DNA of 35,323 bases from Leidyana gryllorum EB-2025a (taxonomy: Eukaryota > Protista > Apicomplexa): positions 1 through 35,323 of the forward strand of contig JBLWGC010000120.1 in the NCBI GenBank assembly GCA_048772705.1. Direction: 5' to 3'. The position numbers were made by a program, and so were the translations under genes. The notes beneath the pieces are model-generated. The model was not told the DNA's origin and did not search any database. It saw nothing but the letters and a program-made list of their open reading frames with translations. Positions 1 through 17,960 of this stretch are shown here, one piece after another (within the stretch, counting starts at the first letter, position 1; every line of letters begins with the position of its first letter).

Positions 1-3000
1 GAGGAGTCTGATGTCGAGCGTCCACAAACCCGAAGAGCCGCTGCTGATCTCTGAGCCTCAATCTGAGGAATCTGATGTCGAGCACCCACAACCCGTCGAC
101 AGCGAGAAGCCACAGACTGTCTCTGAGCCTCAATCTGAGGAGTCTGATGTTGAGCACCCACAACCCGTCGACAGCGAGAAGCCACAGACTGTCTCTGAGC
201 CTCAATCTGAGGAGTCTGATGTCGAGCGTCCACAAGCCGAAGAGCCGCTGCTGATCTCTGAGCCTCAATCTGAGGAGTCTGATGTCGAGCGTCCACAACC
301 CGTCGACAGCGAGAAGCCACAGACTGTCTCTGAGCCTCAATCTGAGGAGTCTGATGTCGAGCGTCCACAACCCGAAGAGCCGCTGCTGATCTCTGAGCCT
401 CAATCTGAGGAGTCTGATGTCGAGCACCCACAACCCGTCGACAGCGAGAAGCCACAGACTGTCTCTGAGCCTCAATCTGAGGAATCTGATGTCGAGCAAC
501 CTCAACCCGAAGAGCCACAGCTGATCTCTGAGCCTCAATCTGAGGAGTCTGATGTCGAGCGTCCTCAACCCGTCGACAGCGAGAAGCCACAGACTGTCTC
601 TGAGCCTCAATCTGAGGAGTCTGATGTCGAGCGTCCACAACCCGAAGAGCCACAGCTGATCTCTGAGCCTCAATCTGAGGAGTCTGATGTCGAGCGTCCT
701 CAACCCGAAGAGCCACAGACTGTCTCTGAGCCTCAATCTGAGGAGTCTGATGTCGAGCGTCCACAACCCGTCGACAGCGAGAAGCCACAGACTGTCTCTG
801 AGCCTCAATCTGAGGAGTCTGATGTCGAGCGTCCACAACCCGAAGAGCCGCTGCTGATCTCTGAGCCTCAATCTGAGGAGTCTGATGTCGAGCGTCCCAA
901 ACCCGAAGAACCGCTGCTGATCTCTGAGCCTCAATCTGAGGAGTCTGATGTCGAGCACCCACAACCCGTCGACAGCGAGAAGCCACAGACTGTCTCTGAG
1001 CCTCAATCTGAGGAGTCTGATGTTGAGCAGCCACAACCCGAAGAGCCGCTGCTGATCTCTGAGCCTCAATCTGAGGAGTCTGATGTCGAGCGTCCCAAAC
1101 CCGAAGAGCCACAGCTGATCTCTGAGCCTCAATCTGAGGAGTCTGATGTCGAGCACCCACAACCCGTCGACAGCGAGAAGCCACAGACTGTCTCTGAGCC
1201 TCAATCTGAGGAGTCTGATGTCGAGCGTCCACAACCCGTCGACAGCGAGAAGCCACAGACTGTCTCTGAGCCTCAATCTGAGGAGTCTGATGTCGAGCGT
1301 CCACAACCCGAAGAGCCGCTGCTGATCTCTGAGCCTCAATCTGAGGAATCTGATGTCGAGCAGCCACAACCTGTTGACAGCGAGAAGCCACAGACTGTCT
1401 CTGAGCCTCAATCTGAGGAATCTGATGTTGAGCAGCCACAACCCGAAGAGCCGCTGCTGATCTCTGAGCCTCAATCTGAGGAGTCTGATGTTGAGCAGCC
1501 ACAACCCGAAGAACCGCTGCTGATCTCTGAGCCTCAATCTGAGGAGTCCGATGTCGACCGTCCCAAACCCGAAGAGCCGCTGCTGATCTCTGAGCCTCAA
1601 TCTGAGGAGTCTGATGTCGAGCACCCACAACCCGTCGACAGCGAGAAGCCACAGACTGTCTCTGAGCCTCAATCTGAGGAGTCTGATGTCGAGCAACCAC
1701 AACCCGAAGAGCCACAGCTGATCTCTGAGCCTCAATCTGAGGAGTCTGATGTCGAGCGTCCACAACCCGAAGAGCCACAGCTGATCTCTGAGCCTCAATC
1801 TGAGGAGTCTGATGTCGAGCACCCACAACCCGTCGACAGCGAGAAGCCACAGACTGTCTCTGAGCCTCAATCTGAGGAGTCTGATGTCGAGCGTCCACAA
1901 CCCGAAGAGCCGCTGCTGATCTCTGAGCCTCAATCTGAGGAGTCTGATGTCGAGCGTCCCAAACCCGAAGAACCGCTGCTGATCTCTGAGCCTCAATCTG
2001 AGGAGTCTGATGTCGAGCACCCACAACCCGTCGACAGCGAGAAGCCACAGACTGTCTCTGAGCCTCAATCTGAGGAGTCTGATGTCGAGCGTCCACAACC
2101 CGAAGAACCGCTGCTGATCTCTGAGCCTCAATCTGAGGAGTCTGATGTCGAGCGTCCACAACCCGAAGAGCCGCTGCTGATCTCTGAGCCTCAATCTGAG
2201 GAGTCTGATGTCGAGCACCCACAACCCGTCGACAGCGAGAAGCCACAGACTGTCTCTGAGCCTCAATCTGAGGAGTCTGATGTCGAGCGTCCACAACCCG
2301 AAGAGCCGCTGCTGATCTCTGAGCCTCAATCTGAGGAGTCTGATGTCGAGCGTCCACAACCCGTCGACAGCGAGAAGCCACAGACTGTCTCTGAGCCTCA
2401 ATCTGAGGAGTCTGATGTTGAGCAGCCACAACCCGAAGAACCGCTGCTGATCTCTGAGCCTCAATCTGAGGAGTCTGATGTCGAGCGTCCCAAACCCGAA
2501 GAACCGCTGCTGATCTCTGAGCCTCAATCTGAGGAGTCTGATGTCGAGCGTCCACAACCCGAAGAACCGCTGCTGATCTCTGAGCCTCAATCTGAGGAGT
2601 CTGATGTCGAGCGTCCCAAACCCGAAGAACCGCTGCTGATCTCTGAGCCTCAATCTGAGGAGTCTGATGTCGAGCGTCCCAAACCCGAAGAACCGCTGCT
2701 GATCTCTGAGCCTCAATCTGAGGAGTCTGATGTCGAGCGTCCCGAACCCGAAGAGCCGCTGCTGATCTCTGAGCCTCAATCTGAGGAGTCTGATGTCGAG
2801 CGTCCCGAACCCGAAGAGCCACAGACTGTCTCTGAGCCTCAATCTGAGGAATCTGATGTCGAGCGTCCAGAACCCGAAGAACCGCTGTTGATCTCTGAGC
2901 CTCAATCTGAGGAGTCTGATGTCGAGCACCCACAACCCGTCGACAGCGAGAAGCCACAGACTGTCTCTGAGCCTCAATCTGAGGAGTCTGATGTCGACCG

Positions 3001-6000
3001 TCCCAAACCCGAAGAGCCGCTGCTGATCTCTGAGCCTCAATCTGAGGAGTCTGATGTCGAGCACCCACAACCCGTCGACAGCGAGAAGCCACAGACTGTC
3101 TCTGAGCCTCAATCTGAGGAGTCTGATGTCGAGCGTCCACAACCCGAAGAGCCACAGCTGATCTCTGAGCCTCAATCTGAGGAGTCTGATGTCGAGCGTC
3201 CACAACCCGAAGAGCCACAGACTGTCTCTGAGCCTCAATCTGAGGAGTCTGATGTCGAGCGTCCCAAACCCGAAGAGCCACAGACTGTCTCTGAGCCTCA
3301 ATCTGAGGAGTCTGATGTCGAGCGTCCACAACCCGAAGAGCCACAGACTGTCTCTGAGCCTCAATCTGAGGAGTCTGATGTCGAGCGTCCACAACCCGAA
3401 GAGCCACAGCTGATCTCTGAGCCTCAATCTGAGGAGTCTGATGTCGAGCACCCACAACCCGTCGACAGCGAGAAGCCACAGACTGTCTCTGAGCCTCAAT
3501 CTGAGGAGTCTGATGTCGAGCGTCCACAACCCGAAGAGCCGCTGCTGATCTCTGAGCCTCAATCTGAGGAGTCTGATGTCGAGCGTCCCAAACCCGAAGA
3601 GCCACAGACTGTCTCTGAGCCTCAATCTGAGGAGTCTGATGTCGAGCACCCACAACCCGTCGACAGCGAGAAGCCACAGACTGTCTCTGAGCCTCAGTCT
3701 GAGGAATCTGATGTCGAGCGTCCCAAACCCGAAGAGCCGCTGCTGATCTCTGAGCCTCAATCTGAGGAGTCTGATGTCGAGCACCCACAACCCGTCGACA
3801 GCGAGAAGCCACAGACTGTCTCTGAGCCTCAATCTGAGGAGTCTGATGTCGAGCGTCCACAACCCGAAGAGCCACAGCTGATCTCTGAGCCTCAATCTGA
3901 GGAGTCTGATGTTGAGCACCGACAACCCGTCGACAGCGAGAAGCCACAGTTTGTCTCTGAGCCTCAATCTGAGGAGTCTGATGTCGAGCGTCCCAAACCC
4001 GAAGAGCCACAGCTGATCTCTGAGCCTCAGTCTGAGGAGTCTGATGTCGAGCAACCTCAACCCGAAGAGCCACAGACTGTCTCTGAGCCTCAATCTGAGG
4101 ACTCGGATGTCGAGCGTCCCAAACCCGAAGAGCCGCTGCTGATCTCTGAGCCTCAATCTGAGGAGTCTGATGTCGAGCACCCGCAACCCGAAGAGCCGCT
4201 GCTGATCTCTGAGCCTCAATCTGAGGAGTCTGATGTCGAGCACCCACAACCCGTCGACAGCGAGAAGCCACAGACTGTCTCTGAGCCTCAATCTGAGGAG
4301 TCTGATGTCGAGCGTCCCAAACCCGAAGAGCCACAGACTGTCTCTGAGCCTCAATCTGAGGAATCTGATGTCGAGCGTCCACAACCCGACAGCGAGAAGC
4401 CACAGACTGTCTCTGAGCCTCAATCTGAGGAGTCTGATGTCGAGCGTCCTCAACCCGAAGAGCCGCTGCTGATCTCTGAGCCTCAATCTGAGGAGTCTGA
4501 TGTCGAGCACCCACAACCCGTCGACAGCGAGAAGCCACAGACTGTCTCTGAGCCTCAATCTGAGGAGTCTGATGTCGAGCGTCCACAACCCGTCGACAGC
4601 GAGAAGCCACAGACTGTCTCTGAGCCTCAATCTGAGGAGTCTGATGTCGAGCGTCCACAACCCGAAGAGCCACAGCTGATCTCTGAGCCTCAATCTGAGG
4701 AGTCCGATGTCGAGCGTCCACAACCCGAAGAGCCGCTGCTGATCTCTGAGCCTCGATCTGAGGAGTCCGATGTCGAGCGTCCAGAACCTGAAGAGCCCCT
4801 GCTGATCTCTGAGCCTCAGTCTGAGGAATCTGATGTTGAGAGTCCACAACCCGTCGACAGCGAGAAGCCACAGACTGTCTCTGAGCCTCAATCTGAGGAG
4901 TCTGATGTCGAGCGTCCACAACCCGAAGAGCCGCTGCTGATCTCTGAGCCTCAATCTGAGGAGTCTGATGTCGAGCACCCACAACCCGTCGACAGCGAGA
5001 AGCCACAGACTGTCTCTGAGCCTCAATCTGAGGAGTCTGATGTCGAGCGTCCACAACCCGAAGAGCCACAGCTGATCTCTGAGCCTCAATCTGAGGAGTC
5101 TGATGTCGAGCGTCCACAACCCGAAGAGCCGCTGCTGATCTCTGAGCCTCAATCTGAGGAGTCTGATGTCGAGCGTCCACAACCCGAAGAGCCACAGACT
5201 GTCTCTGAGCCTCAATCTGAGGAGTCTGATGTCGAGCGTCCACAACCCGAAGAGCCACAGACTGTCTCTGAGCCTCAATCTGAGGAGTCTGATGTCGAGC
5301 GTCCCAAACCCGAAGAGCCACAGACTGTCTCTGAGCCTCAATCTGAGGAGTCTGATGTCGAGCGTCCACAACCCGAAGAGCCGCTGCTGATCTCTGAGCC
5401 TCAATCTGAGGAGTCTGATGTCGAGCAGCCACAACCTGTTGACAGCGAGAAGCCACAGACTGTCTCTGAGCCTCAATCTGAGGAGTCTGATGTCGAGCAC
5501 CCACAACCCGTCGACAGCGAGAAGGCACAGACTGTCTCTGAGCCTCAATCTGAGGAGTCTGATGTCGAGCACCCACAACCCGTCGACAGCGAGAAGCCAC
5601 AGACTGTCTCTGAGCCTCAATCTGAGGAGTCTGATGTCGAGCGTCCACAACCCGAAGAGCCGCTGCTGATCTCTGAGCCTCAATCTGAGGAGTCTGATGT
5701 CGAGCGTCCCAAACCCGAAGAGCCACAGACTGTCTCTGAGCCTCAATCTGAGGAGTCTGATGTCGAGCACCCACAACCCGTCGACAGCGAGAAGCCACAG
5801 ACTGTCTCTGAGCCTCAATCTGAGGAGTCTGATGTCGAGCGTCCACAACCCGAAGAGCCGCTGCTGATCTCTGAGCCTCAATCTGAGGAGTCTGATGTCG
5901 AGCACCCACAACCCGTCGACAGCGAGAAGCCACAGACTGTCTCTGAGCCTCAATCTGAGGAGTCTGATGTCGAGCGTCCAGAACCCGAAGAGCCACAGCT

Positions 6001-9000
6001 GATCTCTGAGCCTCAATCTGAGGAGTCTGATGTCGAGCGTCCCAAACCCGAAGAGCCGCTGCTGATCTCTGAGCCTCAATCTGAGGAGTCTGATGTCGAG
6101 CACCCACAACCCGAAGAGCCGCTGCTGATCTCTGAGCCTCAATCTGAGGAGTCTGATGTCGAGCACCCACAACCCGTCGACAGCGAGAAGCCACAGACTG
6201 TCTCTGAGCCTCAATCTGAGGAGTCTGATGTCGAGCGTCCCAAACCCGAAGAGCCACAGCTGATCTCTGAGCCTCAATCTGAGGAGTCTGATGTCGAGCG
6301 TCCACAACCCGTCGACAGCGAGAAGCCACAGACTGTCTCTGAGCCTCAATCTGAGGAGTCTGATGTCGAGCGTCCTCAACCCGAAGAGCCACAGACTGTC
6401 TCTGAGCCTCAATCTGAGGAGTCTGATGTCGAGCGTCCACAACCCGAAGAGCCGCTGCTGATCTCTGAGCCTCAATCTGAGGAGTCTGATGTCGAGCAGC
6501 CACAACCCGAAGAGCCGCTGCTGATCTCTGAGCCTCAATCTGAGGAGTCTGATGTCGAGCGTCCCAAACCCGAAGAACCGCTGCTGATCTCTGAGCCTCA
6601 ATCTGAGGAGTCTGATGTCGAGCGTCCACAACCCGAAGAGCCGCTGCTGATCTCTGAGCCTCAATCTGAGGAGTCTGATGTCGAGCGTCCCAAACCCGAA
6701 GAGCCACAGACTGTCTCTGAGCCTCAATCTGAGGAGTCTGATGTCGAGCACCCACAACCCGTCGACAGCGAGAAGCCACAGACTGTCTCTGAGCCTCAAT
6801 CTGAGGAGTCTGATGTCGAGCGTCCACAACCCGAAGAGCCGCTGCTGATCTCTGAGCCTCAATCTGAGGAGTCTGATGTCGAGCGTCCAGAACCCGAAGA
6901 GCCACAGCTGATCTCTGAGCCTCAATCTGAGGAGTCTGATGTCGAGCAGCCACAACCCGTCGACAGCGAGAAGCCACAGACTGTCTCTGAGCCTCAATCT
7001 GAGGAGTCTGATGTCGAGCGTCCTCAACCCGAAGAGCCGCTGCTGATCTCTGAGCCTCAATCTGAGGAGTCTGATGTCGAGCGTCCACAACCCGAAGAGC
7101 CGCTGCTGATCTCTGAGCCTCAGTCTGAGGAGTCTGATGTCGAGCGTCCACAACCCGAAGAGCCGCTGCTGATCTCTGAGCCTCAATCTGAGGAGTCTGA
7201 TGTCGAGCGTCCAGAACCCGAAGAGCCGCTGCTGATCTCTGAGCCTCAATCTGAGGAGTCTGATGTCGAGCATCCACAACCCGTCGACAGCGAGAAGCCA
7301 CAGACTGTCTCTGAGCCTCAATCTGAGGAGTCTGATGTCGAGCGTCCACAACCCGAAGAGCCGCTGCTGATCTCTGAGCCTCGATCTGAGGAGTCTGATG
7401 TCGAGCGTCCAGAACCCGAAGAGCCACAGCTGATCTCTGAGCCTCAATCTGAGGAGTCTGATGTCGAGCAGCCACAACCCGTCGACAGCGAGAAGCCACA
7501 GACTGTCTCTGAGCCTCAATCTGAGGAATCTGATGTCGAGCGTCCACAACCCGAAGAGCCACAGCTGATCTCTGAGCCTCAATCTGAGGAGTCTGATGTC
7601 GAGCGTCCACAACCCGTCGACAGCGAGAAGCCACAGACTGTCTCTGAGCCTCAATCTGAGGAGTCTGATGTCGAGCGTCCACAACCCGAAGAGCCACAGC
7701 TGATCTCTGAGCCTCAATCTGAGGAGTCTGATGTCGAGCGTCCTCAACCCGAAGAGCCGCAGCTGATCTCTGAGCCTCAATCTGAGGAGTCTGATGTCGA
7801 GCGTCCCAAACCCGAAGAGCCGCTGCTGATCTCTGAGCCTCAATCTGAGGAGTCTGATGTCGAGCGTCCCAAACCCGAAGAGCCACAGACTGTCTCTGAG
7901 CCTCAATCTGAGGAATCTGATGTCGAGCGTCCACAACCCGACGAGCCACAGACTGTCTCTGAGCCTCAATCTGAGGAGTCTGATGTCGAGCGTCCTCAAC
8001 CCGAAGAGCCGCTGCTGATCTCTGAGCCTCAATCTGAGGAGTCTGATGTCGAGCGTCCTCAACCCGAAGAGCCGCTGCTGATCTCTGAGCCTCAATCTGA
8101 GGAGTCTGATGTCGAGCGTCCAGAACCCGAAGAGCCGCTGCTGATCTCTGAGCCTCAATCTGAGGAGTCTGATGTCGAGCGTCCAGAACCCGAAGAGCCG
8201 CTGCTGATCTCTGAGCCTCAGTCTGAGGAATCTGATGTTGAGCGTCCACAACCCGAAGAGCCGCTGCTGATCTCTGAGCCTCGATCTGAGGAGTCTGATG
8301 TCGAGCGTCCAGAACCCGAAGAGCCGCTGCTGATCTCTGAGCCTCAGTCTGAGGAATCTGATGTTGAGCGTCCACAACCCGAAGAGCCGCTGCTGATCTC
8401 TGAGCCTCGATCTGAGAAGTCTGACGTCGAGCGTCCACCACCTGTTGACAGCGAGAAGCCACAGACTGTCTCTGAGCCTCAATCTGAGGAATCTGATGTC
8501 GAGCGTCCCAAACCCGAAGAGCCACAGCTGATCTCTGAGCCTCAGTCTGAGGAATCTGATGTTGAGAGTCCACAACCCGTCGACAGCGAGAAGCCACAGA
8601 CTGTCTCTGAGCCTCAATCTGAGGAGTCTGATGTCGAGCGTCCACAACCCGAAGAGCCGCTGCTGATCTCTGAGCCTCAATCTGAGGAGTCTGATGTCGA
8701 GCGTCCACAACCCGAAGAGCCACAGCTGATCTCTGAGCCTCAATCTGAGGAGTCTGATGTCGAGCGTCCACAACCTGTTGACAGCGAGAAGCCACAGCTG
8801 ATCTCTGAGCCTCAATCTGAGGAGTCCGATGTTGAGCAGCCACAACCCGAAGAGCCGCTGCTAATCTCTGAGCCTCAATCTGAGGAGTCTGATGTCGAGC
8901 ACCCACAACCCGTCGACAGCGAGAAGCCACAGCTGATCTCTGAGCCTCAACCCGAAGAGCCCGATGTTGAGCAGCCACAACCCGAAGAGCCACAGACTGT

Positions 9001-9170
9001 CTCTGAGCCTCAATCTGAGGAGTCTGATGTCGAGCGTCCAGAACCTGTTGACAGCGAGAAGCCACAGACTGTCTGCGAGCCCCAATCTGAGGAATCTGAT
9101 GTCGAGCGTCCAGAACCCGTCGGCAGTAATACGGCACAGCTGTCATCTGAGGCTCAGTCTGAGGTGTCTG
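1..9170 (+). repeat. Coding tandem array of roughly 135-140 units of 63 bp (21 aa) or 72 bp (24 aa): SEPQSEESDVE-[R/H/Q]P[Q/K/E]P-[EE|VDSEK]-P-[LLI|QLI|QTV]
   Basis: Near-invariant 36-bp core TCTCTGAGCCTCAATCTGAGGAGTCTGATGTCGAGC alternates with 27- or 36-bp variable segments. Units degenerate after ~8,400. Unit count is estimated from length. Confidence 0.97.
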
Positions 9171-12100
9171 ATTTTGACTATTTGAAGGCGAGACGTCATA
9201 CGGCGGTTGAGAAGATTGATGAGCGGGAAAGCGCAGATCGGCTCGAAGGCATTCAACTCGGTCATTGTGTGGACAAGATTGATCAGGAAGCTGGAAATGC
9301 AACGTGTGACTCAGAAGAGAAGGACTGGAACTACGTGCGAGAGACGTCGGCAGCCCACGGTGTTGTTTCGGGCTTGTCTGACTCCACTGGGTCAGCACAT
9401 ACGATTAGAAGTGCTGATGTGCCTCTAATCGCGAGTGAACATGAGAGTTGCGGTGAAAGCCCCGTATCAGCCTCGGCCGCAGATTCCACCGTCGATGCAG
9501 AGAGTGTGGGGACGGATACTCAACCTGAGGAGCTTCGTGTTTGCACACCCGAGAGAGTGATAAAAGATGTTTCTGAGAGAGCTGAAGTAGTTGAGAAACA
9601 GGAGAATGAGCGTCGACAAATGGTTGCGGTTTCGATGGTCCGTCCCACGTCTGAGAACAGCATTGCTGTGTGGCCGAACGACTCTCCATCTCTTCAATCA
9701 ACGCCCAGGATCCGGAATCCTTTCTCTGCCGTGACCGTATACGCGGAAGCGCTGCCAGATCAGAGGGTACACACTTCGGTGCCTGGTATACGAGTGGATG
9801 TGTTGGATTTGATTCCAAGGTTCAGTACCATTGAGGATGGCACTGAAATTGTTGTCAATCACCGGGGAGTTCCTAAAGTCACAAGGATTGATAGTGACGG
9901 TAGTGCTTCTGTTATCGATCGCGATCATTCCGAATCTCCTTCACAGAGTCCGGAAGAGCCAAGTACCCCATCTGGGGCATTGGAGCCGCCCTTCATGGCA
10001 GAGCGATTGGAGAGTCCTTTGTCAAGCATCATGTTCGCGAGTCAGGTGTCGCGAGGTACATGGTCGCCTAGCTCCCGGGTAGTAGCCCACGAACTCTGCT
10101 CACCCCGAGGCTTTGAGAGTGAAACATCCATCCCAATAACAGACGAGGAACTGCTGAGGCCGGGTGAGAAGGAACGGATCTCACAAGAGCGAGTATCGAT
10201 CCATGTCTTGTCAGACGTCTCGTCTGACTATGAGGAATTATTGCCCTCTGCCCACAAACGTAGTGTGGAACACTGGCCTCTACTCCCAATCCGCACGGCA
10301 AATGTTTCGAGGATTCGCAGTGTCTCACCCGCACCCAGAGAAGAGTTGAAATTCACTCCCATCAGGAAGTCTTTGACTGCTCGAGACGAGGTGTACCCAT
10401 CCCGTCTTCGACGACAAAGATTTACAACCATTGTCGATGGAGTGGACGACACGCCCCGCGATCAGTGTGAGGAGCATCGAGACGCCCGTTGCCGCCGTCG
10501 TACCAGAGTCACAGAACTACGACGAGGCTTCAAGGGTGAGAGTCGGTATACCAGCAGCTCGCAAGGCAGAAAGGAGTTCGTATCGTCTTTCGTTGATTCT
10601 GATGGAATAGTGTCGGAGGGGTCCAGAAGCAATTCACCGTTACTATATCCCACTCCACGACCCCAGCCTCCACAGACCTCACAGGTTGCCGCCACCCAAC
10701 GAACTGAGAGGGTAAAGCGGCATCAGCTTTTCACGGATACATCGCACACTGATCCATCTCCGACTATGTCAGTGGGTGACAGAGGCATCTTTGTACCAGC
10801 TGCGGAGGAATATGATCTTCGAAGTAGATCTGCCGGCACAACCGGGGCTGCATACACGCGAGTCCAAAACAGACTCCATATGAGTGGATCGACTGAAGCC
10901 TTTGATCTCCGGAGTGTGTCGGACGAGGCAGTGCCTTCCTCGGCGGAAATGCGCAGCACTGTCAATGAAGTGGCCGAAGAAGTCGACGATGGACGCAGGA
11001 GAGCTCTGGGCCCAACGCAGACCCACGCAACTGAGATTGCTCCACCGAAGCCTCGCCACAGTCGAGACAAAGCCACGGCGATTTCAGTGAAGAGTGAACA
11101 GAGTGATAAACGGAGTCGCTGGAAGATTGTGCAGCAGATGACTAGTGAGTTATTGGAGGCGCTGCCCGCTAAGGCTACCGTGCTATCACGGACAGGCTGT
11201 GACGAGACTCACATCTCGGGACCTCATCCCCGCATGAACATTGCCACTCCCTCTGACAGTGTGCACATCAAGGCCTTCAAAGATACCAACCGTCGGCAGT
11301 CAGGCAGAAGCTCAGCCTATGCACCCATATATATTGACAATGCCGGATCTGAGACACCTTCGAGTACTTCGAGGCCCACCCATTGTACATCTCATCATGA
11401 CATCTCAACACCGAGACTGGACATCTCAACACCGAGACTGGACATCTCAACACCGAGACTGGACATCTCGGCTTCGGCAGCGGAGGGTGGTCAACGAAGC
11501 TCAACACCCTGTGTCCTGACTCGGGGCACTTTGTCTCAGAGGGCTTCTCGTCTAAGCGACAACAGGTCGGAGACGACGGAGTATTTGCTACAGGATCACC
11601 TTGGCGACCCACGCTGGAGGAGGCTGAGTGCAGCAGAAGACAGTGAAGATTCGATTGGCCGAGACACTCTGCCCTCATTCGCCCAATTCGCGGACGCCCT
11701 CCAGGTACCCAGAGGAGAGATCAGTCATGCAGCCCACCGACCGGTGAGATCGAGAGTCACCAAGACTACTCGGGTGACCCATACACGGACTGTCGAGGTA
11801 ACGGACCTCAAGGAGAGGATCAGCAACACTGCCGACACCAAGCAACCCTCGGCTATCAGATTGGACCTATCGCCACCAATGGGAGGTGTCGACCGGTACA
11901 CCTCGCCATCGGGGACGAGTGGTACCTCGGAACATCACAGAGGCAGACCGTTGCCACCCTCGCCCAGCAAGGTGGCGCAGGCTGCCTTGGCAGAGATGGT
12001 GGATAGCGTCGTGACCCGTTACACGTCTCAAGAACGAAGATCGCAGTCTCCCGCACGCCGACCCCGATCTCAGTACCAAATAGCTACTGAACCTCACATC

Positions 12101-14115
12101 AGGTCAGTCAAGAAAGCTGCAGAGAGACACGCCTCATCCTCCCGTGGGCGGTCCACTCGCGCGCAATCTAATGAAAGACCCGTTGAGCGACTGACTCACA
12201 TGGATTCTGCACCAAGACCGATGTCTCCAGCTCCGCGTACCTTCAACGAGTACAAAGCGTGGCGAGAAGCCAAAGCGCTCGTGGTGGAGACGAAGCAACG
12301 CATCCGCAACTCGGAGCAGACTGACCTCATTCAACTTCCTCCGCCTTTGACTGAGCTCAATTCACGCACACATGAGGCCGTCAGAGATTATCTGCCCCGA
12401 CCCACAAAGAAAAGACACAGTGTTCGTCAGCAGAAGCACACCAAGATCTCTCAAAAGCACTCCAGCGTTGAACGAGAAGCGCCGCGGCCCCGTAAGTCGA
12501 AGGATGGATTGGCTGGTGTGGTTCAAGAAAGTGTGACAACTGATCATCATGTGAAGACCGAAGACGTGTATCCCAAGAAATCAAGACCGAAACGCATGAA
12601 GGTGACAAAGTTGATTGATCAGGCAGAAGAGTGGTATGAGGGCATCGGAGCTATTCACCGAGGCGTCGCCATTGACTTCCCTAAGCCAAGTCTGACACTC
12701 AAGCGGGTGAATGCCATGCACATAATTGGAACAGGCCGACGTACACGGTCTGTACCCCTTCACCCGAGTGCGAGAGGCTCTGTACCTGCAGCAAGATCGA
12801 AACGCTCGGGTTCCGTCTCCGCACCCTCAAGTATTTCGAAACACACAGTTGTGCAAACTGAAGCAATTGACAAACTGCCAAAACGTCATGTGGTACATCA
12901 CCAGACACAGATGTTCCTGCCAGCGGCTCCTAAACCCTGTTCGAGAATAGTCACACAGACGTGCTATATTGAACCGGCTGAGCGTCACACCATGGAGCGA
13001 GCTCTGGCCATTCGCATCGAATTCATCACAGTGCAAGGCAAATGGCAGCTGGTCACAACTAATCAACTCAGCGATGAGAAGGGAGGAGCATATTCGCTCG
13101 CTCTGAGAGGTCGAAAGAAGTGGGGCAAAGTTGACCGACTTGACATGGCCCAGACTGCTCGTGCACATTCTCTCAGCCCGAAAGCAATGTTCCCGACACC
13201 CGATGAAGAGAATAAGGCCGCCGTGCCGTCGTCCTCGCGAGTCAAACTACAGTCTGTTCCGCCTCTCCATTACAGTCCTCGAGCTGTGACTGAGGACTTG
13301 GCTGCCAGCTACAGAGAGATGATGTCGGCAACCCACAGAGTGGTCCGCAACTCTGGCGTCTCAATGGAACAATCGAGAGCGAGGATCTGGTCCGCAAAGA
13401 AAGTTCAAACTGTGGAAGCGAGAGATCTGCAGATGACATGGGTTCCGGCTTTGGCACTGGAGACTGCTGTCAACTTTAGGGGCAGTGTGTCATCTTCTGG
13501 TGCTTCCACAGGAGTGCAAATTGGTGTTCCCAATTTGGGAGGAACCAGTAGGAGAGCGTCACGGGTGAGTACTAAGACTACCATAATGGCAATCTCAATT
13601 GTGTTTTATGCAGATCTCTGAGGTCGAAGACGCGTTAAGTGTGGTTTCGAGCGTGCCCGCATTGTCGAGTCGTGTTGATGAGGTCATTGCTCCCACCACC
13701 ACCGATGTTCTGTCGAGTCCAGATACTGACGGTCCCCCGCAACCCACGAAGCTCGGTGCCAACGAAGTGGTTTATGCCCCTACCGTGACCGACGTTCCCA
13801 GAGTGGTAAGTTTTTGGTTTCAGCTGTCATCTTTGATATGTGGTGGTGCAGAGGATCTGGCGAGAAGCTGTGACCGAATGTGTGATGAGGCCCAAACGTC
13901 GCAGAAAGAGGCGCACTTCCACTATCCCTGAAACGGTGGTCAATGCAGAGGCATCGAATCCAACTGGGGAGAATTTCTTGGACGTCCCCCGTGTACACCC
14001 CACGAGCGAGAGACGGGGACGGCGCGTGAGTGAAGCAGCGCTTCTGGTGACTACGACTCGGAGGAGTACTCGGATCACCCTCGTTTCGGAGACTGCAGTA
14101 ACTGAGCAGCAGTGA
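1..14115 (+). CDS. Giant repetitive, intrinsically disordered protein, 5'-partial (>4,600 aa): ~3,050 aa acidic E/S/P/Q repeat followed by ~1,600 aa S/R/T/P-rich tail. Exons <1-13564, 13614-13805, 13852-14115
   Basis: 13.6-kb stop-free frame. Phase-0 introns 13565-13613 (GTGAGT..TGCAG, 49 nt) and 13806-13851 (GTAAGT..TGCAG, 46 nt) join it in frame to the 13599 and 13840 ORFs. The ATG at 11 is out of frame with the repeat and only connects via an extra base at ~26-28, so the real start is upstream of the window. Confidence 0.8.
11399..11469 (+). repeat. 21-bp tandem repeat x3.4 (DISTPRL)n within the giant gene
   Basis: GACATCTCAACACCGAGACTG at 11399, 11420 and 11441, plus a partial copy at 11462. 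Confidence 0.95.
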
Positions 14116-14331
14116 TTGAGCAATTGTAGCGTCCCTATAACGATTGATTGAACCCGCCTTTTTGAGTATCTCAATGTTCTAATTGATATTGACAACGAAT
14201 TGAAGCTTTGTTTGGTACATTTGATGACCCAGCAGCGAGATCAGGGACATTGGGTCATTGGTGTCGTATCACACAAGGGTTAAGTAGTTCTTGTTTTTTT
14301 GTATTTTTCGCTTGGACAAAGGGAGGTGGCC

Positions 14332-16179
14332 ATGGGAGAAGTCCAGAAAGGAGTTGCTAAGGCGGCTGCCATTAAAGCAACTTGGTCGAGCAAGGCATTG
14401 ACCTACCTCTATGTAGGGATTCTAATCTTTGCCTGCATGACCTCTCTGGAGTCTCAAGTCAATTATCTCTTCATTCCTTATATCACATCTGACTTTCGCT
14501 CCCATGGCCTGTTATCAACCATCCAAATCGTGTCTGCGGTGCTGCAAACAGTCTTGAAAGCTCCAGCGGCCAAGGTCGCTGATGTCTTTGGACGTACGGA
14601 AGCTCTCCTCACCGGCATCCTCTTTTACGCATTGGGATATCTGTGCATGGCCGTCTCAACCAATATCTGGTGGTATGCAGCGTCTCAGATTTTCTACATT
14701 GGTGGCAATACGGGAATTCAATTCCTGCTCCAATTGATCATTGCTGATACCTCAAGTCTTACCAACCGTGCGCTTTTATCTACAATCCCAACGGTACCTT
14801 TCCTTTGGAATGTCTGGGCAGGCCCTCTACTTGGACAATGGCTGCTTCGAGATGTCGGCTGGCGGTGGGGTACCGCTCTGTGGATGATTGTGGTCCCCGT
14901 TTCGGGCATTCCTTTGTTCGTCGTCTTGATCAAGAAAGGTCGAGAGTTCCGCAAGAAGGCAGCAGAACAATCACGTGTGGAAGTGCTCGTCGACGGCGCT
15001 GGAGCCAATGAGGCTTCGGGCGACTCGCAACCTGAGAAGACCAAAGCTGACCGCAGCCAATCTGGCTCGGCCGCTATTCAGGACTCCTCTTCCTCTCGAG
15101 AGATGAAAGAGAAAAAATCGTGGTGGAGACGGACCGTCGACTACTGTGATCAGATGGACATCGGTGGCACTCTGGTGGTGTCAGCTGGGTTGGCACTAAT
15201 GCTCGTTCCTTTGACATTGGCGTCTTCCTCGCCAGACCGGTGGGGTTCTGTTGGTGTTATCCTGCCCATCTGTCTCGGTTTTGTACTCTTCGCCTTATTT
15301 GTCTGGTACGAGCTCAAGTTTGCCAGACATCCTCTGGTCTCCCTTCGCCTCCTAAAGAATCCTTCCGTCTTCTTCGCATGCTTCGGAGGCTTCTTTTACT
15401 TTTTCTCGTACTACGTCGGAAGGCTGTACTTCCCCTCATACCTTCAAGTGGCGGCTGGATACAGTCCGCGGAAGGCGGGACAGGTCCACAATGTCATGAA
15501 CTTCAGTTCAGTTGCGGTTGGTTTCCTCGTGGGACTGGCAATCAAGTGGTTGAAGCGCGTAAGAATCTTCGTCATCTCCGGTGTGATTTGCTATCTGGTT
15601 GGTCTGGGTTTGCTGATCTTTGTCCGAACCCCAAGCAACAAATTAGCCGCGTTGATTTTGGGCCAATTAGTGCTGGGTATTGGAGGAGGTCTATATTCCG
15701 GACCAAACCAGGTGCTCGTGCAGAGTCATGCAACCCATCAAGATCTTGGAGCTGCGACTGCCCTCGTGCTGGTCATCACGACACTGGGATGGTCCACGGG
15801 CGCCGCAGTCGCCGGAGCTATCTGGACTAACTATCTCCCTCGGCGCTTGACAGCCAACCTGCCTGATCATATGCTCGACATGGTCGACGACATTGCTAAT
15901 TCAATTGTGGTAGCACAGGATTACGAGATGGGCACACCAGAGAGAACTGCCATCAACCTTGCCTATGTCGAGGTTATGAGGCTCCTCTGTATCATTGGCG
16001 TCTGTCTCGGAGTGCTACAGCTTATCTGCGGATTTATGGTCAAATCCGCACCCATCACTGACGCAGTTGCTATCGAAACTGAATCTGGCGATGAGAAATC
16101 CCTTGCCGTTTCCGAAGATGAAGCAACACCCAGTCTCAGAGAAACATCAGAGATTGCCAAGTCGGAGTTCGCTGTTTAA
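14332..16179 (+). CDS. Siderophore-iron transporter, MFS SIT/ARN family (Sit1/Arn/MirB/Str-like), 615 aa, intronless
   Basis: About 14 hydrophobic segments. Family-typical motifs: KGVAKAAAI..W, YITSDFRSHGLLSTI, AKVADVFGRTE, IIADTSSLTNR, PFLWNVW, WRWG, and C-terminal YEMGTPERTAINLAY..MRLLCI. ATG context GCCATGG. Confidence 0.88.
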   Translation: MGEVQKGVAKAAAIKATWSSKALTYLYVGILIFACMTSLESQVNYLFIPYITSDFRSHGLLSTIQIVSAVLQTVLKAPAAKVADVFGRTEALLTGILFYALGYLCMAVSTNIWWYAASQIFYIGGNTGIQFLLQLIIADTSSLTNRALLSTIPTVPFLWNVWAGPLLGQWLLRDVGWRWGTALWMIVVPVSGIPLFVVLIKKGREFRKKAAEQSRVEVLVDGAGANEASGDSQPEKTKADRSQSGSAAIQDSSSSREMKEKKSWWRRTVDYCDQMDIGGTLVVSAGLALMLVPLTLASSSPDRWGSVGVILPICLGFVLFALFVWYELKFARHPLVSLRLLKNPSVFFACFGGFFYFFSYYVGRLYFPSYLQVAAGYSPRKAGQVHNVMNFSSVAVGFLVGLAIKWLKRVRIFVISGVICYLVGLGLLIFVRTPSNKLAALILGQLVLGIGGGLYSGPNQVLVQSHATHQDLGAATALVLVITTLGWSTGAAVAGAIWTNYLPRRLTANLPDHMLDMVDDIANSIVVAQDYEMGTPERTAINLAYVEVMRLLCIIGVCLGVLQLICGFMVKSAPITDAVAIETESGDEKSLAVSEDEATPSLRETSEIAKSEFAV

Positions 16180-16601: not shown

Positions 16602-17960
16602 TCATTTCTCAGCTACTACAATTTGGGGTATGGTCTTATCTGCGAATGATTCGAAAGCTTTGCATTGATCATCGTCGCGTGCTAGTCTTGACATGAGGGT
16701 CGGTCGACATTCCTGATGATGGTGTCCGGGTTTAGCTTCATCATCCAGAGCACAATATAAGATGGTGGCAGACCCAGCCGAAGTCTCTTTGCCGAATGTC
16801 CACATGGTGGCGCGCAGTAAAAGTTCGGTTAATTGGCTGGTCCCGATTCGGCCTACAAGCTTGGTCCAAACGACTCCTGGCATCACAGAATAGACCTTGA
16901 GTCCGGCGTCTCCATGTTTCCTCATCAAGATCCGCATGTGATATAGCTGGGCCAACTTTGATACTCTGTAAGAACGCAACATGCTGTATGTCTCAGGCTT
17001 GGGAGTACTGTATGACTCCCAGTCCAAGTCGCTGACTTCTGCTTGGAGGTGCGCTGAGCTGCTTGTCATGATGATTTTCTTGTCTTGAGATTTCATCACC
17101 AGTGGCATCAAGAGCTCGACCAAATAGTAGTGAGAAATGGTGTTGACCTGCAGGCACGGTTCCAGTCCATCTTCTGTCAGTTGAACCTCAGCAGCAGTTT
17201 TGGGGCCGGCTATACCAGCATTGCAGATCAAGATATCGATTCCCTCTGGACACTCGGAGGCCACCTCTTTAGCAAAGTCGGCAACGCTCTTGAAGGAGGA
17301 GAGATCCAAGTTGAGAGCCACCACCTCAGGCTCGAATTCGAACAAGCTCTTGACTTCCTTCTTGATGTTCTCAACTATCATTGCTCTACGATCTTTGCCT
17401 CCTCTCACTCCCAATACAACTTTATCGGCTTTGAGTGCTGAGAGATGCGAGGCAGCGTAGAAACCGAAACCATCGGAGGCACCAGTCATGACTACGGTTT
17501 TACCCTTGAGCTTCTCGGCATCCTCTTCAGCGATCTCGTATATGGCGCCGTTAGCGATTTTGCGATAGAAAGCGGCGCAGCAGAACACGAGAATGTAAAC
17601 AGACACTCGACTCCTGCTGGATACGTATGGGAGGAGGAACCAAATCGTAATTGGAACGCTGCAAAGGTATAGCATAGACTGGATGTAGGGCTCGCGATAC
17701 ATCGTGACGAAAAAGACATGATCCAGACGCTCCCGGGCGCGCTCGGGCAACAACTGGGCCAACGCTTTGCGAACCTTCTGCTGTTTGATGATTTTCAGAG
17801 TGGCTTTATAGGCGAACGAGTCTCGGATAGTTCGCAATTGCCACATAACTGGATTGTAACGTGCGATCTTGTCCCATAGCTCCTTCCTTTTCACTGGATC
17901 AGAGAGCATCGCAATCAGCCGCTTCGCAAGCGGGATCAGCTTCCCGAGCTTGTCCATCAT
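16602..17960 (-). CDS. Short-chain dehydrogenase/reductase (RDH/WWOX-like) with N-terminal extension and two hydrophobic helices, 452 aa, intronless
   Basis: TGASDGFG Rossmann motif, LDLSSF, ICNAG, catalytic S..YRVSK, PG motif. ATG at 17960 is in GCCACCATG context; the ORF-track start at 18014 is TTG. Confidence 0.88.
   Translation of the reverse strand: MMDKLGKLIPLAKRLIAMLSDPVKRKELWDKIARYNPVMWQLRTIRDSFAYKATLKIIKQQKVRKALAQLLPERARERLDHVFFVTMYREPYIQSMLYLCSVPITIWFLLPYVSSRSRVSVYILVFCCAAFYRKIANGAIYEIAEEDAEKLKGKTVVMTGASDGFGFYAASHLSALKADKVVLGVRGGKDRRAMIVENIKKEVKSLFEFEPEVVALNLDLSSFKSVADFAKEVASECPEGIDILICNAGIAGPKTAAEVQLTEDGLEPCLQVNTISHYYLVELLMPLVMKSQDKKIIMTSSSAHLQAEVSDLDWESYSTPKPETYSMLRSYRVSKLAQLYHMRILMRKHGDAGLKVYSVMPGVVWTKLVGRIGTSQLTELLLRATMWTFGKETSAGSATILYCALDDEAKPGHHHQECRPTLMSRLARDDDQCKAFESFADKTIPQIVVAEK

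What the first reader, a model, noticed from the sequence alone, without database searches (positions are those of the whole stretch)
14332..16179. Fungal-type siderophore-iron importer in an apicomplexan-looking genome: candidate horizontal transfer and siderophore piracy
Seen: an intact, intronless 615-aa MFS gene with SIT/ARN motifs along its whole length, among genes that mostly carry several small introns. Established: the SIT/ARN family (Sit1, Arn1-4, MirA/B, Str1-3) is known chiefly from fungi and imports ferric siderophores. Inference: the neighbours look alveolate rather than fungal, so this may be a fungus-to-protist transfer that lets a parasite take up siderophores made by other microbes. 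No siderophore synthesis gene is in the window.
Basis: partly seen in the sequence, partly recalled or inferred. Interest (0 to 1): 0.85.

Follow-up and report, generated by a model that had tools for sequence, protein, structure and literature searches.

The report
Fungal siderophore transporter family in gregarines
A gregarine (a single-celled parasite related to those of insect guts) and several of its relatives carry a transporter from a family that reviews call fungus-only, most likely taken from a fungus long ago, and it probably lets them take up iron bound to other microbes' iron-scavenging molecules.

Summary
Confirmed. 14332-16179 (+) is an intact, intronless 615-aa, 14-helix SIT/ARN-family MFS gene, with one match in its genome. 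It keeps the Tyr-Arg-Tyr triad (Y531/R538/Y545) that yeast Str1/Str2 need for ferrichrome use. The host is a gregarine: CWC22 groups 100/100 with Gregarina. The gene is not private to this genome: orthologues in G. niphandrodes (GenBank 'putative siderochrome-iron transporter'), Gregarina sp. Poly, Blabericola migrator and two unnamed runs form one clade (100/99). That, and gregarine gene order on both flanks, argue strongly against contamination or a chimera. The clade falls among fungal SITs (Str1, Str2, MirC region); the donor is unresolved, and a place outside all fungal SITs is not formally rejected (AU p 0.06 and 0.62). No siderophore-synthesis family was found in the genome. A 2023 review calls SITs exclusively fungal; I found no paper on this transfer. 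Old fungus-to-gregarine transfer: about 0.85. Substrate is untested: surface siderophore import about 0.5; rivals are vacuolar or intracellular handling, heme import (no ferrochelatase found) and efflux. No reads were available. The scan's notes show no such gene elsewhere in this genome.

The parts
14332..16179 (+). SIT/ARN-family 14-TM MFS transporter gene, 615 aa, intronless
15823..15981 (+). Extended last loop between TM13 and TM14 (siderophore transporter domain, SITD; residues about 498-550), with Y531 (15922-15924), R538 (15943-15945), Y545 (15964-15966), equivalent to S. pombe Str1 Y553/R560/Y567
   Evidence: alignment to Str1; residue roles from PMC11840675
15001..15120 (+). Disordered Ser/Glu-rich linker between TM6 and TM7 (residues about 224-263), longer than in most other SITs (66 against median 24 residues over the same span)
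   Evidence: pLDDT; lengths
14224..14283 (+). 19-codon upstream ORF in the 216-nt gap before the start; no evidence of function
   Evidence: sequence; fold z 0.19; no Rfam match; no shared upstream motif seen
11..14115 (+). Left neighbour: giant repeat protein (predicted 4669 aa, predicted introns 13565-13613 and 13806-13851); its last exon matches the end of the ORF that abuts the GT92-like gene in gregarine locus L011
16602..17960 (-). Right neighbour: short-chain dehydrogenase with a hydrophobic N-terminal part; like the transporter, absent from the matching interval of L011
21877..24729 (-). CWC22 (approximate lower end), the host marker that places the contig in gregarines

Best explanation
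An ancestor of the Gregarina/Blabericola group of gregarines acquired a SIT gene from a fungus (probability about 0.85). It has since been inherited vertically as an intronless gene with different neighbours in each lineage and host-like base composition. The protein most likely sits in the surface membrane of the gut-dwelling trophozoite and imports ferric hydroxamate siderophores (ferrichrome or ferrioxamine type) made by gut or dietary fungi and bacteria, coupled to protons, with the TM13-TM14 loop Tyr-Arg-Tyr as the binding site. The iron would feed Fe-S enzymes such as pyruvate:NADP oxidoreductase. Shown: intact gene, family, fold, triad, gregarine host, single gregarine clade, no siderophore-synthesis families found. 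Inferred: direction and donor of transfer, membrane location, substrate, proton coupling, the host animal of this particular genome.
For: Six sequences form one clade at 100/99 or 98/99 in three careful trees and share residues rare in the other SITs (I51 6/6 against 2%, T73 6/6 against 4%, S337 6/6 against 10%). All 28 or so named non-gregarine close relatives are fungal. With deep branches sampled, the other SITs are never one clade without the gregarines in 200 bootstrap trees, and a 98/89 node joins gregarines with Dikarya SITs to the exclusion of the chytrid Spizellomyces. No relative found among 185,579 prokaryote genomes by the pattern scan; none of the 68 metagenome loci long enough to place enters the gregarine clade. 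R538 and Y545 are kept in 6/6 gregarine copies, Y531 is Tyr or Phe in 6/6; these residues are needed for ferrichrome use in Str1, Str2, Arn1, CgSit1 and for transport by MirB (PMC11840675). The nearest characterised proteins, Str1 and Str2, handle ferrichrome (PMC8470733). No SidA, NRPS condensation or IucA/IucC family in G000. Orthologues come from trophozoite transcriptomes, on contigs named with coverage 301 and 261 against 49 for the CWC22 contig (PMC8051059).
Against: AU tests do not reject the gregarine clade as sister to all other sampled SITs (p 0.62; p 0.062); the sister group changes between trees. Phylogeny is a weak guide to substrate in this family (PMC8470733). Str2 is vacuolar and MirC is intracellular and apparently not an importer (PMC5355445). 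The triad is present in most family members, so it does not separate siderophore carriers from heme or glutathione carriers. Gut lumen is hypoxic and the genome has ZIP-family genes, so ferrous uptake may already supply iron. Transcript coverage belongs to contigs of 5-8 kb that may hold several genes. No reads could be laid on this locus.
Confidence: 0.5

Rival explanations
1. Same fungal origin, but the protein works on an internal membrane: it moves ferric siderophore into or out of a vacuole or endosome after pinocytosis (Str2-like) or manages an internal chelate pool (MirC-like).
For: Schizosaccharomyces Str2 is the sister in two of the trees (SH 94; 82/80); MirC-clade proteins give the best fungal scores. 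Str2 is vacuolar, MirC intracellular.
Against: The Str2 sister link is never starred. No acidic dileucine signal in the query's cytosolic tails, and the N-tail is only 18 residues against a median of 56 in the other SITs. A MirC-like role in ferricrocin synthesis is unlikely without NRPS genes.
Confidence: 0.2
2. It imports heme, as S. pombe Str3 and Cryptococcus CnStr1/CnStr3 do.
For: No ferrochelatase found in G000, yet a ferric-reductase/NOX-type gene, a heme protein family, is present, so heme may have to be imported. SIT-family heme carriers exist (PMC13535237). The G. niphandrodes copy has both a YX3Y and an SX4Y in the last loop.
Against: The query's last loop has neither Str3 motif, nor do Poly or ERR10900105; such short motifs also occur in Str2 by chance. 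Gregarinoidea lack complexes III-V, so heme demand is low (PMC8051059). The ferrochelatase blank could come from introns or an incomplete assembly. Str3 itself was not identified in my trees.
Confidence: 0.14
3. It has drifted to a non-iron substrate: glutathione exchange (Gex-like) or efflux of toxic diet or microbial compounds (DHA2-like).
For: ARN, GEX and DHA2 share an origin (PMC3890622). Long branches (0.9-1.1 changes per site). Best solved folds are efflux pumps.
Against: The SIT-specific last loop and triad are kept over long divergence in all six copies; identity to DHA2 pumps of solved structure is only 13-17%.
Confidence: 0.11
4. Origin is not fungus-to-gregarine: ancient eukaryotic gene lost almost everywhere, or both got it from an unsampled donor.
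For: AU tests do not reject a sister position. Many tree rows are unnamed.
Against: SITs occur in all main fungal phyla as many old paralogues (PMC10500206; trees). No other alveolate joins the clade, though orthologues score 1e-90 or better and the list ran to 1e-45. The unnamed rows checked by neighbours looked fungal or were ordinary intron-bearing eukaryote loci.
Confidence: 0.12
5. Fungal contamination or a chimeric contig.
For: No reads were available to span the locus. The gene is intronless and absent from the matching interval of L011.
Against: Orthologues in five independent data sets group together and apart from every fungal and metagenome sequence. The G. niphandrodes copy is on a 282-kb scaffold among ordinary genes. 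Both flanks of the window are neighbours in another gregarine. GC3 0.56 against 0.52-0.62 for host ORFs.
Confidence: 0.02

Closest known systems
Gregarina niphandrodes EZG67007.1 / XP_011130394.1, 'putative siderochrome-iron transporter'
   Same: Orthologue: same clade (100/99), intronless, 14-TM SIT layout, R and last Y of the triad.
   Different: Only 34-36% identical, different neighbours (trehalase, GH77), Phe at the first triad position. Annotation only; I found no paper or test.
Schizosaccharomyces Str1 and Str2 (ferrichrome; plasma membrane and vacuole)
   Same: Same region of the SIT tree; Y-R-Y triad aligns residue for residue with Str1.
   Different: 31-35% identity; host is an alveolate; much shorter N-terminal tail; regulation unknown.
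MirC clade (Histoplasma, Tuber, Aspergillus)
   Same: Best fungal scores (37-40% identity, full length).
   Different: Separate clade in every tree. MirC is tied to ferricrocin synthesis, for which this genome shows no genes.
S. cerevisiae Arn1-4 and other xenosiderophore carriers of non-producing fungi
   Same: Same proposed logic: uptake of siderophores made by others by an organism that makes none.
   Different: Outside the fungal kingdom; these proteins were not identified in my trees.
Str3, CnStr1, CnStr3 (heme) and Gex1/2 (glutathione)
   Same: Same family and fold.
   Different: Query lacks the Str3 YX3Y and SX4Y loop motifs.

Membership tests
SIT/ARN (siderophore-iron transporter) family | MFS protein with 14 transmembrane spans | tested here: met
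   14 hydropathy peaks, AlphaFold model, DHA2 folds best
SIT/ARN (siderophore-iron transporter) family | Extended loop between the last two helices with conserved Tyr-Arg-Tyr | tested here: met
   Y531/R538/Y545 = Str1 Y553/R560/Y567
SIT/ARN (siderophore-iron transporter) family | Groups with SITs, not with bacterial DHA2 pumps | tested here: met
   100/100 split from the bacterial-type outgroup; non-SIT fungal DHA2 pumps were not available as outgroup
SIT/ARN (siderophore-iron transporter) family | Transports a ferric siderophore | not testable with these tools
   needs heterologous uptake assay
SIT/ARN (siderophore-iron transporter) family | Induced by iron starvation | not testable with these tools
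   no runs listed; no shared upstream motif seen in four copies
SIT/ARN (siderophore-iron transporter) family | Found only in fungi (as stated in PMC10500206) | tested here: not met
   host is a gregarine; this concerns the stated range of the family, not the protein's features
Str2 orthologues | Supported sister relation to Schizosaccharomyces Str2 | tested here: inconclusive
   SH 94, 82/80, open
MirC clade | Nests within the MirC clade | tested here: not met
   outside the starred MirC clade
Str3-type heme carriers | YX3Y and SX4Y motifs in the last loop | tested here: not met
   neither in the query (motif from PMC13535237)
Fungus-to-protist horizontal transfer | Recipient clade nested inside donor clade, alternative rejected | tested here: inconclusive
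   nested in ML trees and 200/200 bootstraps, AU p 0.062 and 0.62
Fungus-to-protist horizontal transfer | Physically linked to host genes and shared by related hosts | tested here: met
   assembly-level only, no reads

The most novel reading that the evidence does not exclude
A whole group of arthropod-gut apicomplexans uses a fungus-derived SIT at its surface to take iron from gut-microbe siderophores. This would be, as far as I could find, the first SIT-mediated siderophore uptake outside fungi and the first siderophore piracy in Apicomplexa, and would make these parasites open to siderophore-drug conjugates designed for fungi.
Probability: 0.45. Interest if true: 0.8.

Novelty: new variant of a known kind. 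Interest (0 to 1): 0.62.

Why it matters
A 2023 review states twice that SITs are unique to fungi and builds the case for fungus-specific Trojan-horse drugs on it (PMC10500206). A conserved, transcribed clade in gregarines breaks that rule. It offers a candidate fungus-to-apicomplexan gene transfer, a direction for which my searches found no paper, and a testable route by which gut parasites compete with the microbiome for iron. Iron uptake in Apicomplexa is only now being worked out (ZFT in Toxoplasma, PMC12875612). The test is a routine yeast complementation. The limits: the protein family and fold are well known, the G. niphandrodes gene already carries the family name in GenBank, and gregarines are not human pathogens.

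Tried and rejected
Reads: the look-up of sequencing runs listed no run; continuity and expression of this locus are untested. The AU test on 169 rows did not finish. Upstream hairpin and uORF as an iron switch: whole 219-nt gap folds no better than shuffles (z 0.19), no Rfam hit, nothing shared with three other copies; rejected for now. Recent or private transfer: rejected, orthologues are 33-40% identical and GC3 is host-like. MirC orthology from best hits: rejected by trees. Gregarine identity of ERR10900127 and ERR10900105 could not be shown from neighbours; it rests on the tree and the compact intronless layout. Paper searches for the transfer or the accessions found nothing; the library lacks most subscription journals.

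Full report
Observation. The ORF runs from ATG 14332 to TAA 16179 on the + strand, 615 codons without a stop. It matches Pfam MFS_1 (E 5e-28) and, below cut-off, DHA2 models. It has 14 hydropathy peaks. The AlphaFold model is confident (pLDDT 89, pTM 0.87) except for the TM6-7 linker and C-tail; the best solved folds are the 14-TM pumps EmrB and QacA at 16-17% identity, and the best Atlas matches are ascomycete clusters, the first by features named a putative ferrioxamine B transporter. Two searches of the 15.5-Mb assembly find only this copy. The 'intronless among intron-bearing genes' contrast is weak: the adjacent SDR is also unbroken.

Host. The CWC22 MIF4G region, about 7 kb away, is 77% identical to Gregarina sp. 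Poly and no named fungus is among the best 120 hits. In a tree it groups 100/100 with Gregarina sp. Poly and three Logan sequences inside alveolates. One of these (L011, run SRR31860986) keeps the gene order of window 18-32 kb: GT92-like, sedlin-like, CWC22, eIF1A, PWI and three further genes. Next to its GT92-like gene lies a large low-complexity ORF whose last residues match the last predicted exon of the window's giant gene (10/19 identical, pairwise E 2e-5; 4 of 2000 shuffles score as high). So both flanks of the transporter are neighbours in another gregarine, and the SDR and transporter sit between them here but not there. This is good assembly-level evidence against a chimera, though the left-flank match is short and no reads could be obtained.

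Relatives. The best hits are not fungal but gregarine: Gregarina sp. Poly (E 1e-118) and Blabericola migrator (E 1.5e-111) from EukProt, G. niphandrodes EZG67007.1, annotated 'putative siderochrome-iron transporter', and two unnamed Logan contigs from runs ERR10900127 and ERR10900105. The three genomic copies are intronless and have different neighbours. These six sequences, 33-53% identical to each other, form one clade in every tree (FastTree 99; IQ-TREE C20 100/99, 98/99, 100/99) and share residues rare elsewhere. Every other named close hit is fungal: Tuber, Histoplasma MirC, Saitoella, Lipomyces, Schizosaccharomyces Str1 and Str2, Kwoniella, Spizellomyces and others. The pattern scan of 185,579 prokaryote genomes found no relative, and none of the 68 metagenome loci that could be placed joins the gregarine clade. 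GC3 is 0.56, within the 0.52-0.62 of host ORFs. Independent data sets giving one divergent clade make fungal contamination very unlikely and date the gain to at least the common ancestor of these gregarines.

Direction. With a bacterial-type DHA2 root and only named or checked fungi, the base is unresolved and a sister position for gregarines is not rejected (p-AU 0.62). With 169 rows the clade is nested under two starred nodes (LG+G4 quick tree). With a balanced 46-row set that includes the deepest branches, it is nested in all 200 bootstrap trees, under a 98/89 node with Dikarya SITs, and the sister tree is 14.9 log-likelihood units worse but p-AU is 0.062. Some rows in these larger sets are unnamed and only presumed fungal. 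The nearest fungal lineage shifts among Str2, Saitoella and others and is never starred. Fungus-to-gregarine therefore rests on tree tendency plus distribution: SITs occur across all main fungal phyla (PMC10500206), whereas only this group of alveolates shows one. I put it at about 0.85.

Mechanism. The feature that sets SITs apart from other 14-TM pumps is the long last loop with a Tyr-Arg-Tyr triad, needed for ferrichrome use in Str1, Str2, Arn1 and C. glabrata Sit1 and for transport by MirB (PMC11840675). Str1 Y553/R560/Y567 align to Y531/R538/Y545; Arg and the last Tyr are kept in all six gregarine copies, the first is Tyr or Phe. E40 in TM1 is invariant in the six, which fits proton coupling (inference). 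The genome shows no ornithine N5-oxygenase, NRPS condensation or IucA/IucC family while controls ring, so any siderophore substrate would be foreign; blanks in a spliced, possibly incomplete genome are not proof. It has ZIP-family matches on five contigs and one ferric-reductase/NOX-type gene, which could release iron from a chelate (inference). The named relatives are gut parasites of insects; Gregarinoidea lack complexes III-V and use Fe-S-dependent PNO (PMC8051059). Orthologues were assembled from washed trophozoites on high-coverage transcript contigs (names). The simplest reading is surface uptake of hydroxamate siderophores from gut fungi and bacteria, about 0.5.

Rivals. Str2 is vacuolar and MirC is intracellular and not an importer (PMC5355445), so an internal role is plausible (0.2). 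No ferrochelatase was found, and family members Str3, CnStr1 and CnStr3 carry heme, but the query lacks the Str3 loop motifs (0.14). Glutathione exchange or efflux, as in the related GEX and DHA2 groups, is possible (0.11). Phylogeny predicts substrate poorly in this family (PMC8470733).

Known and new. By sequence, fold, loop and tree this is a SIT; transport was not testable. It is not a MirC orthologue, and Str2 orthology is unproven. [quoted passage not shown] The G. niphandrodes annotation shows the family label has sat in GenBank, but ten searches of the open literature found no paper that notes it or a fungal transfer into gregarines; subscription journals were mostly not covered. The scan's own notes hold no other siderophore finding in this genome.

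Verdict. Real gene, real gregarine context, conserved across a gregarine group, probably of fungal origin; function likely but unproven. New variant of a known kind; interest 0.62.

Noticed in passing
window 11-14115 and L011:14768-18838: Giant repeat protein (predicted 4669 aa) has a probable orthologue in another gregarine that shares only a short C-terminal motif (REA[IV]TECV followed by basic residues), a candidate functional anchor in an otherwise fast-evolving protein.
   Followed up: partly
window 16602-17960: SDR gene with a hydrophobic N-terminal part; it and the transporter both lie in an interval that is empty in L011. Atlas look-alikes are broad eukaryotic SDRs; its origin and any functional link were not tested.
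   Followed up: partly
L004:7754-14679, L005:6701-9019, L007:1729-3006: In the three other genomic copies the transporter lies beside carbohydrate enzymes (trehalase and GH77; GH20 hexosaminidase with a laminin-G-like domain; galactokinase), different in each. Probably chance. The GH20 gene was not found in G000 with that query.
   Followed up: partly
G000:C208:80470-80745 (L098): Ferric-reductase/NOX-type gene in a genome where no ferrochelatase was found, which suggests heme is imported by some route.
   Followed up: partly
P0237 (tree): A CWC22 labelled as from the fly Condylostylus longicornis groups inside alveolates, so that assembly probably holds an apicomplexan parasite.
   Followed up: no
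P0058 (G. niphandrodes): The orthologue has short tandem repeats in the TM6-7 linker and both Str3-like motifs (YX3Y, SX4Y) in the last loop; weak, since such motifs arise by chance.
   Followed up: partly
window 14224-14283: 19-codon uORF before the transporter; no structural or comparative support for a role.
   Followed up: yes
all six gregarine SITs: N-terminal cytosolic tails are short (18-31 residues in genomic copies against a median of 56 in other SITs). Fungal tails carry sorting signals (own knowledge), so trafficking control may differ.
   Followed up: partly
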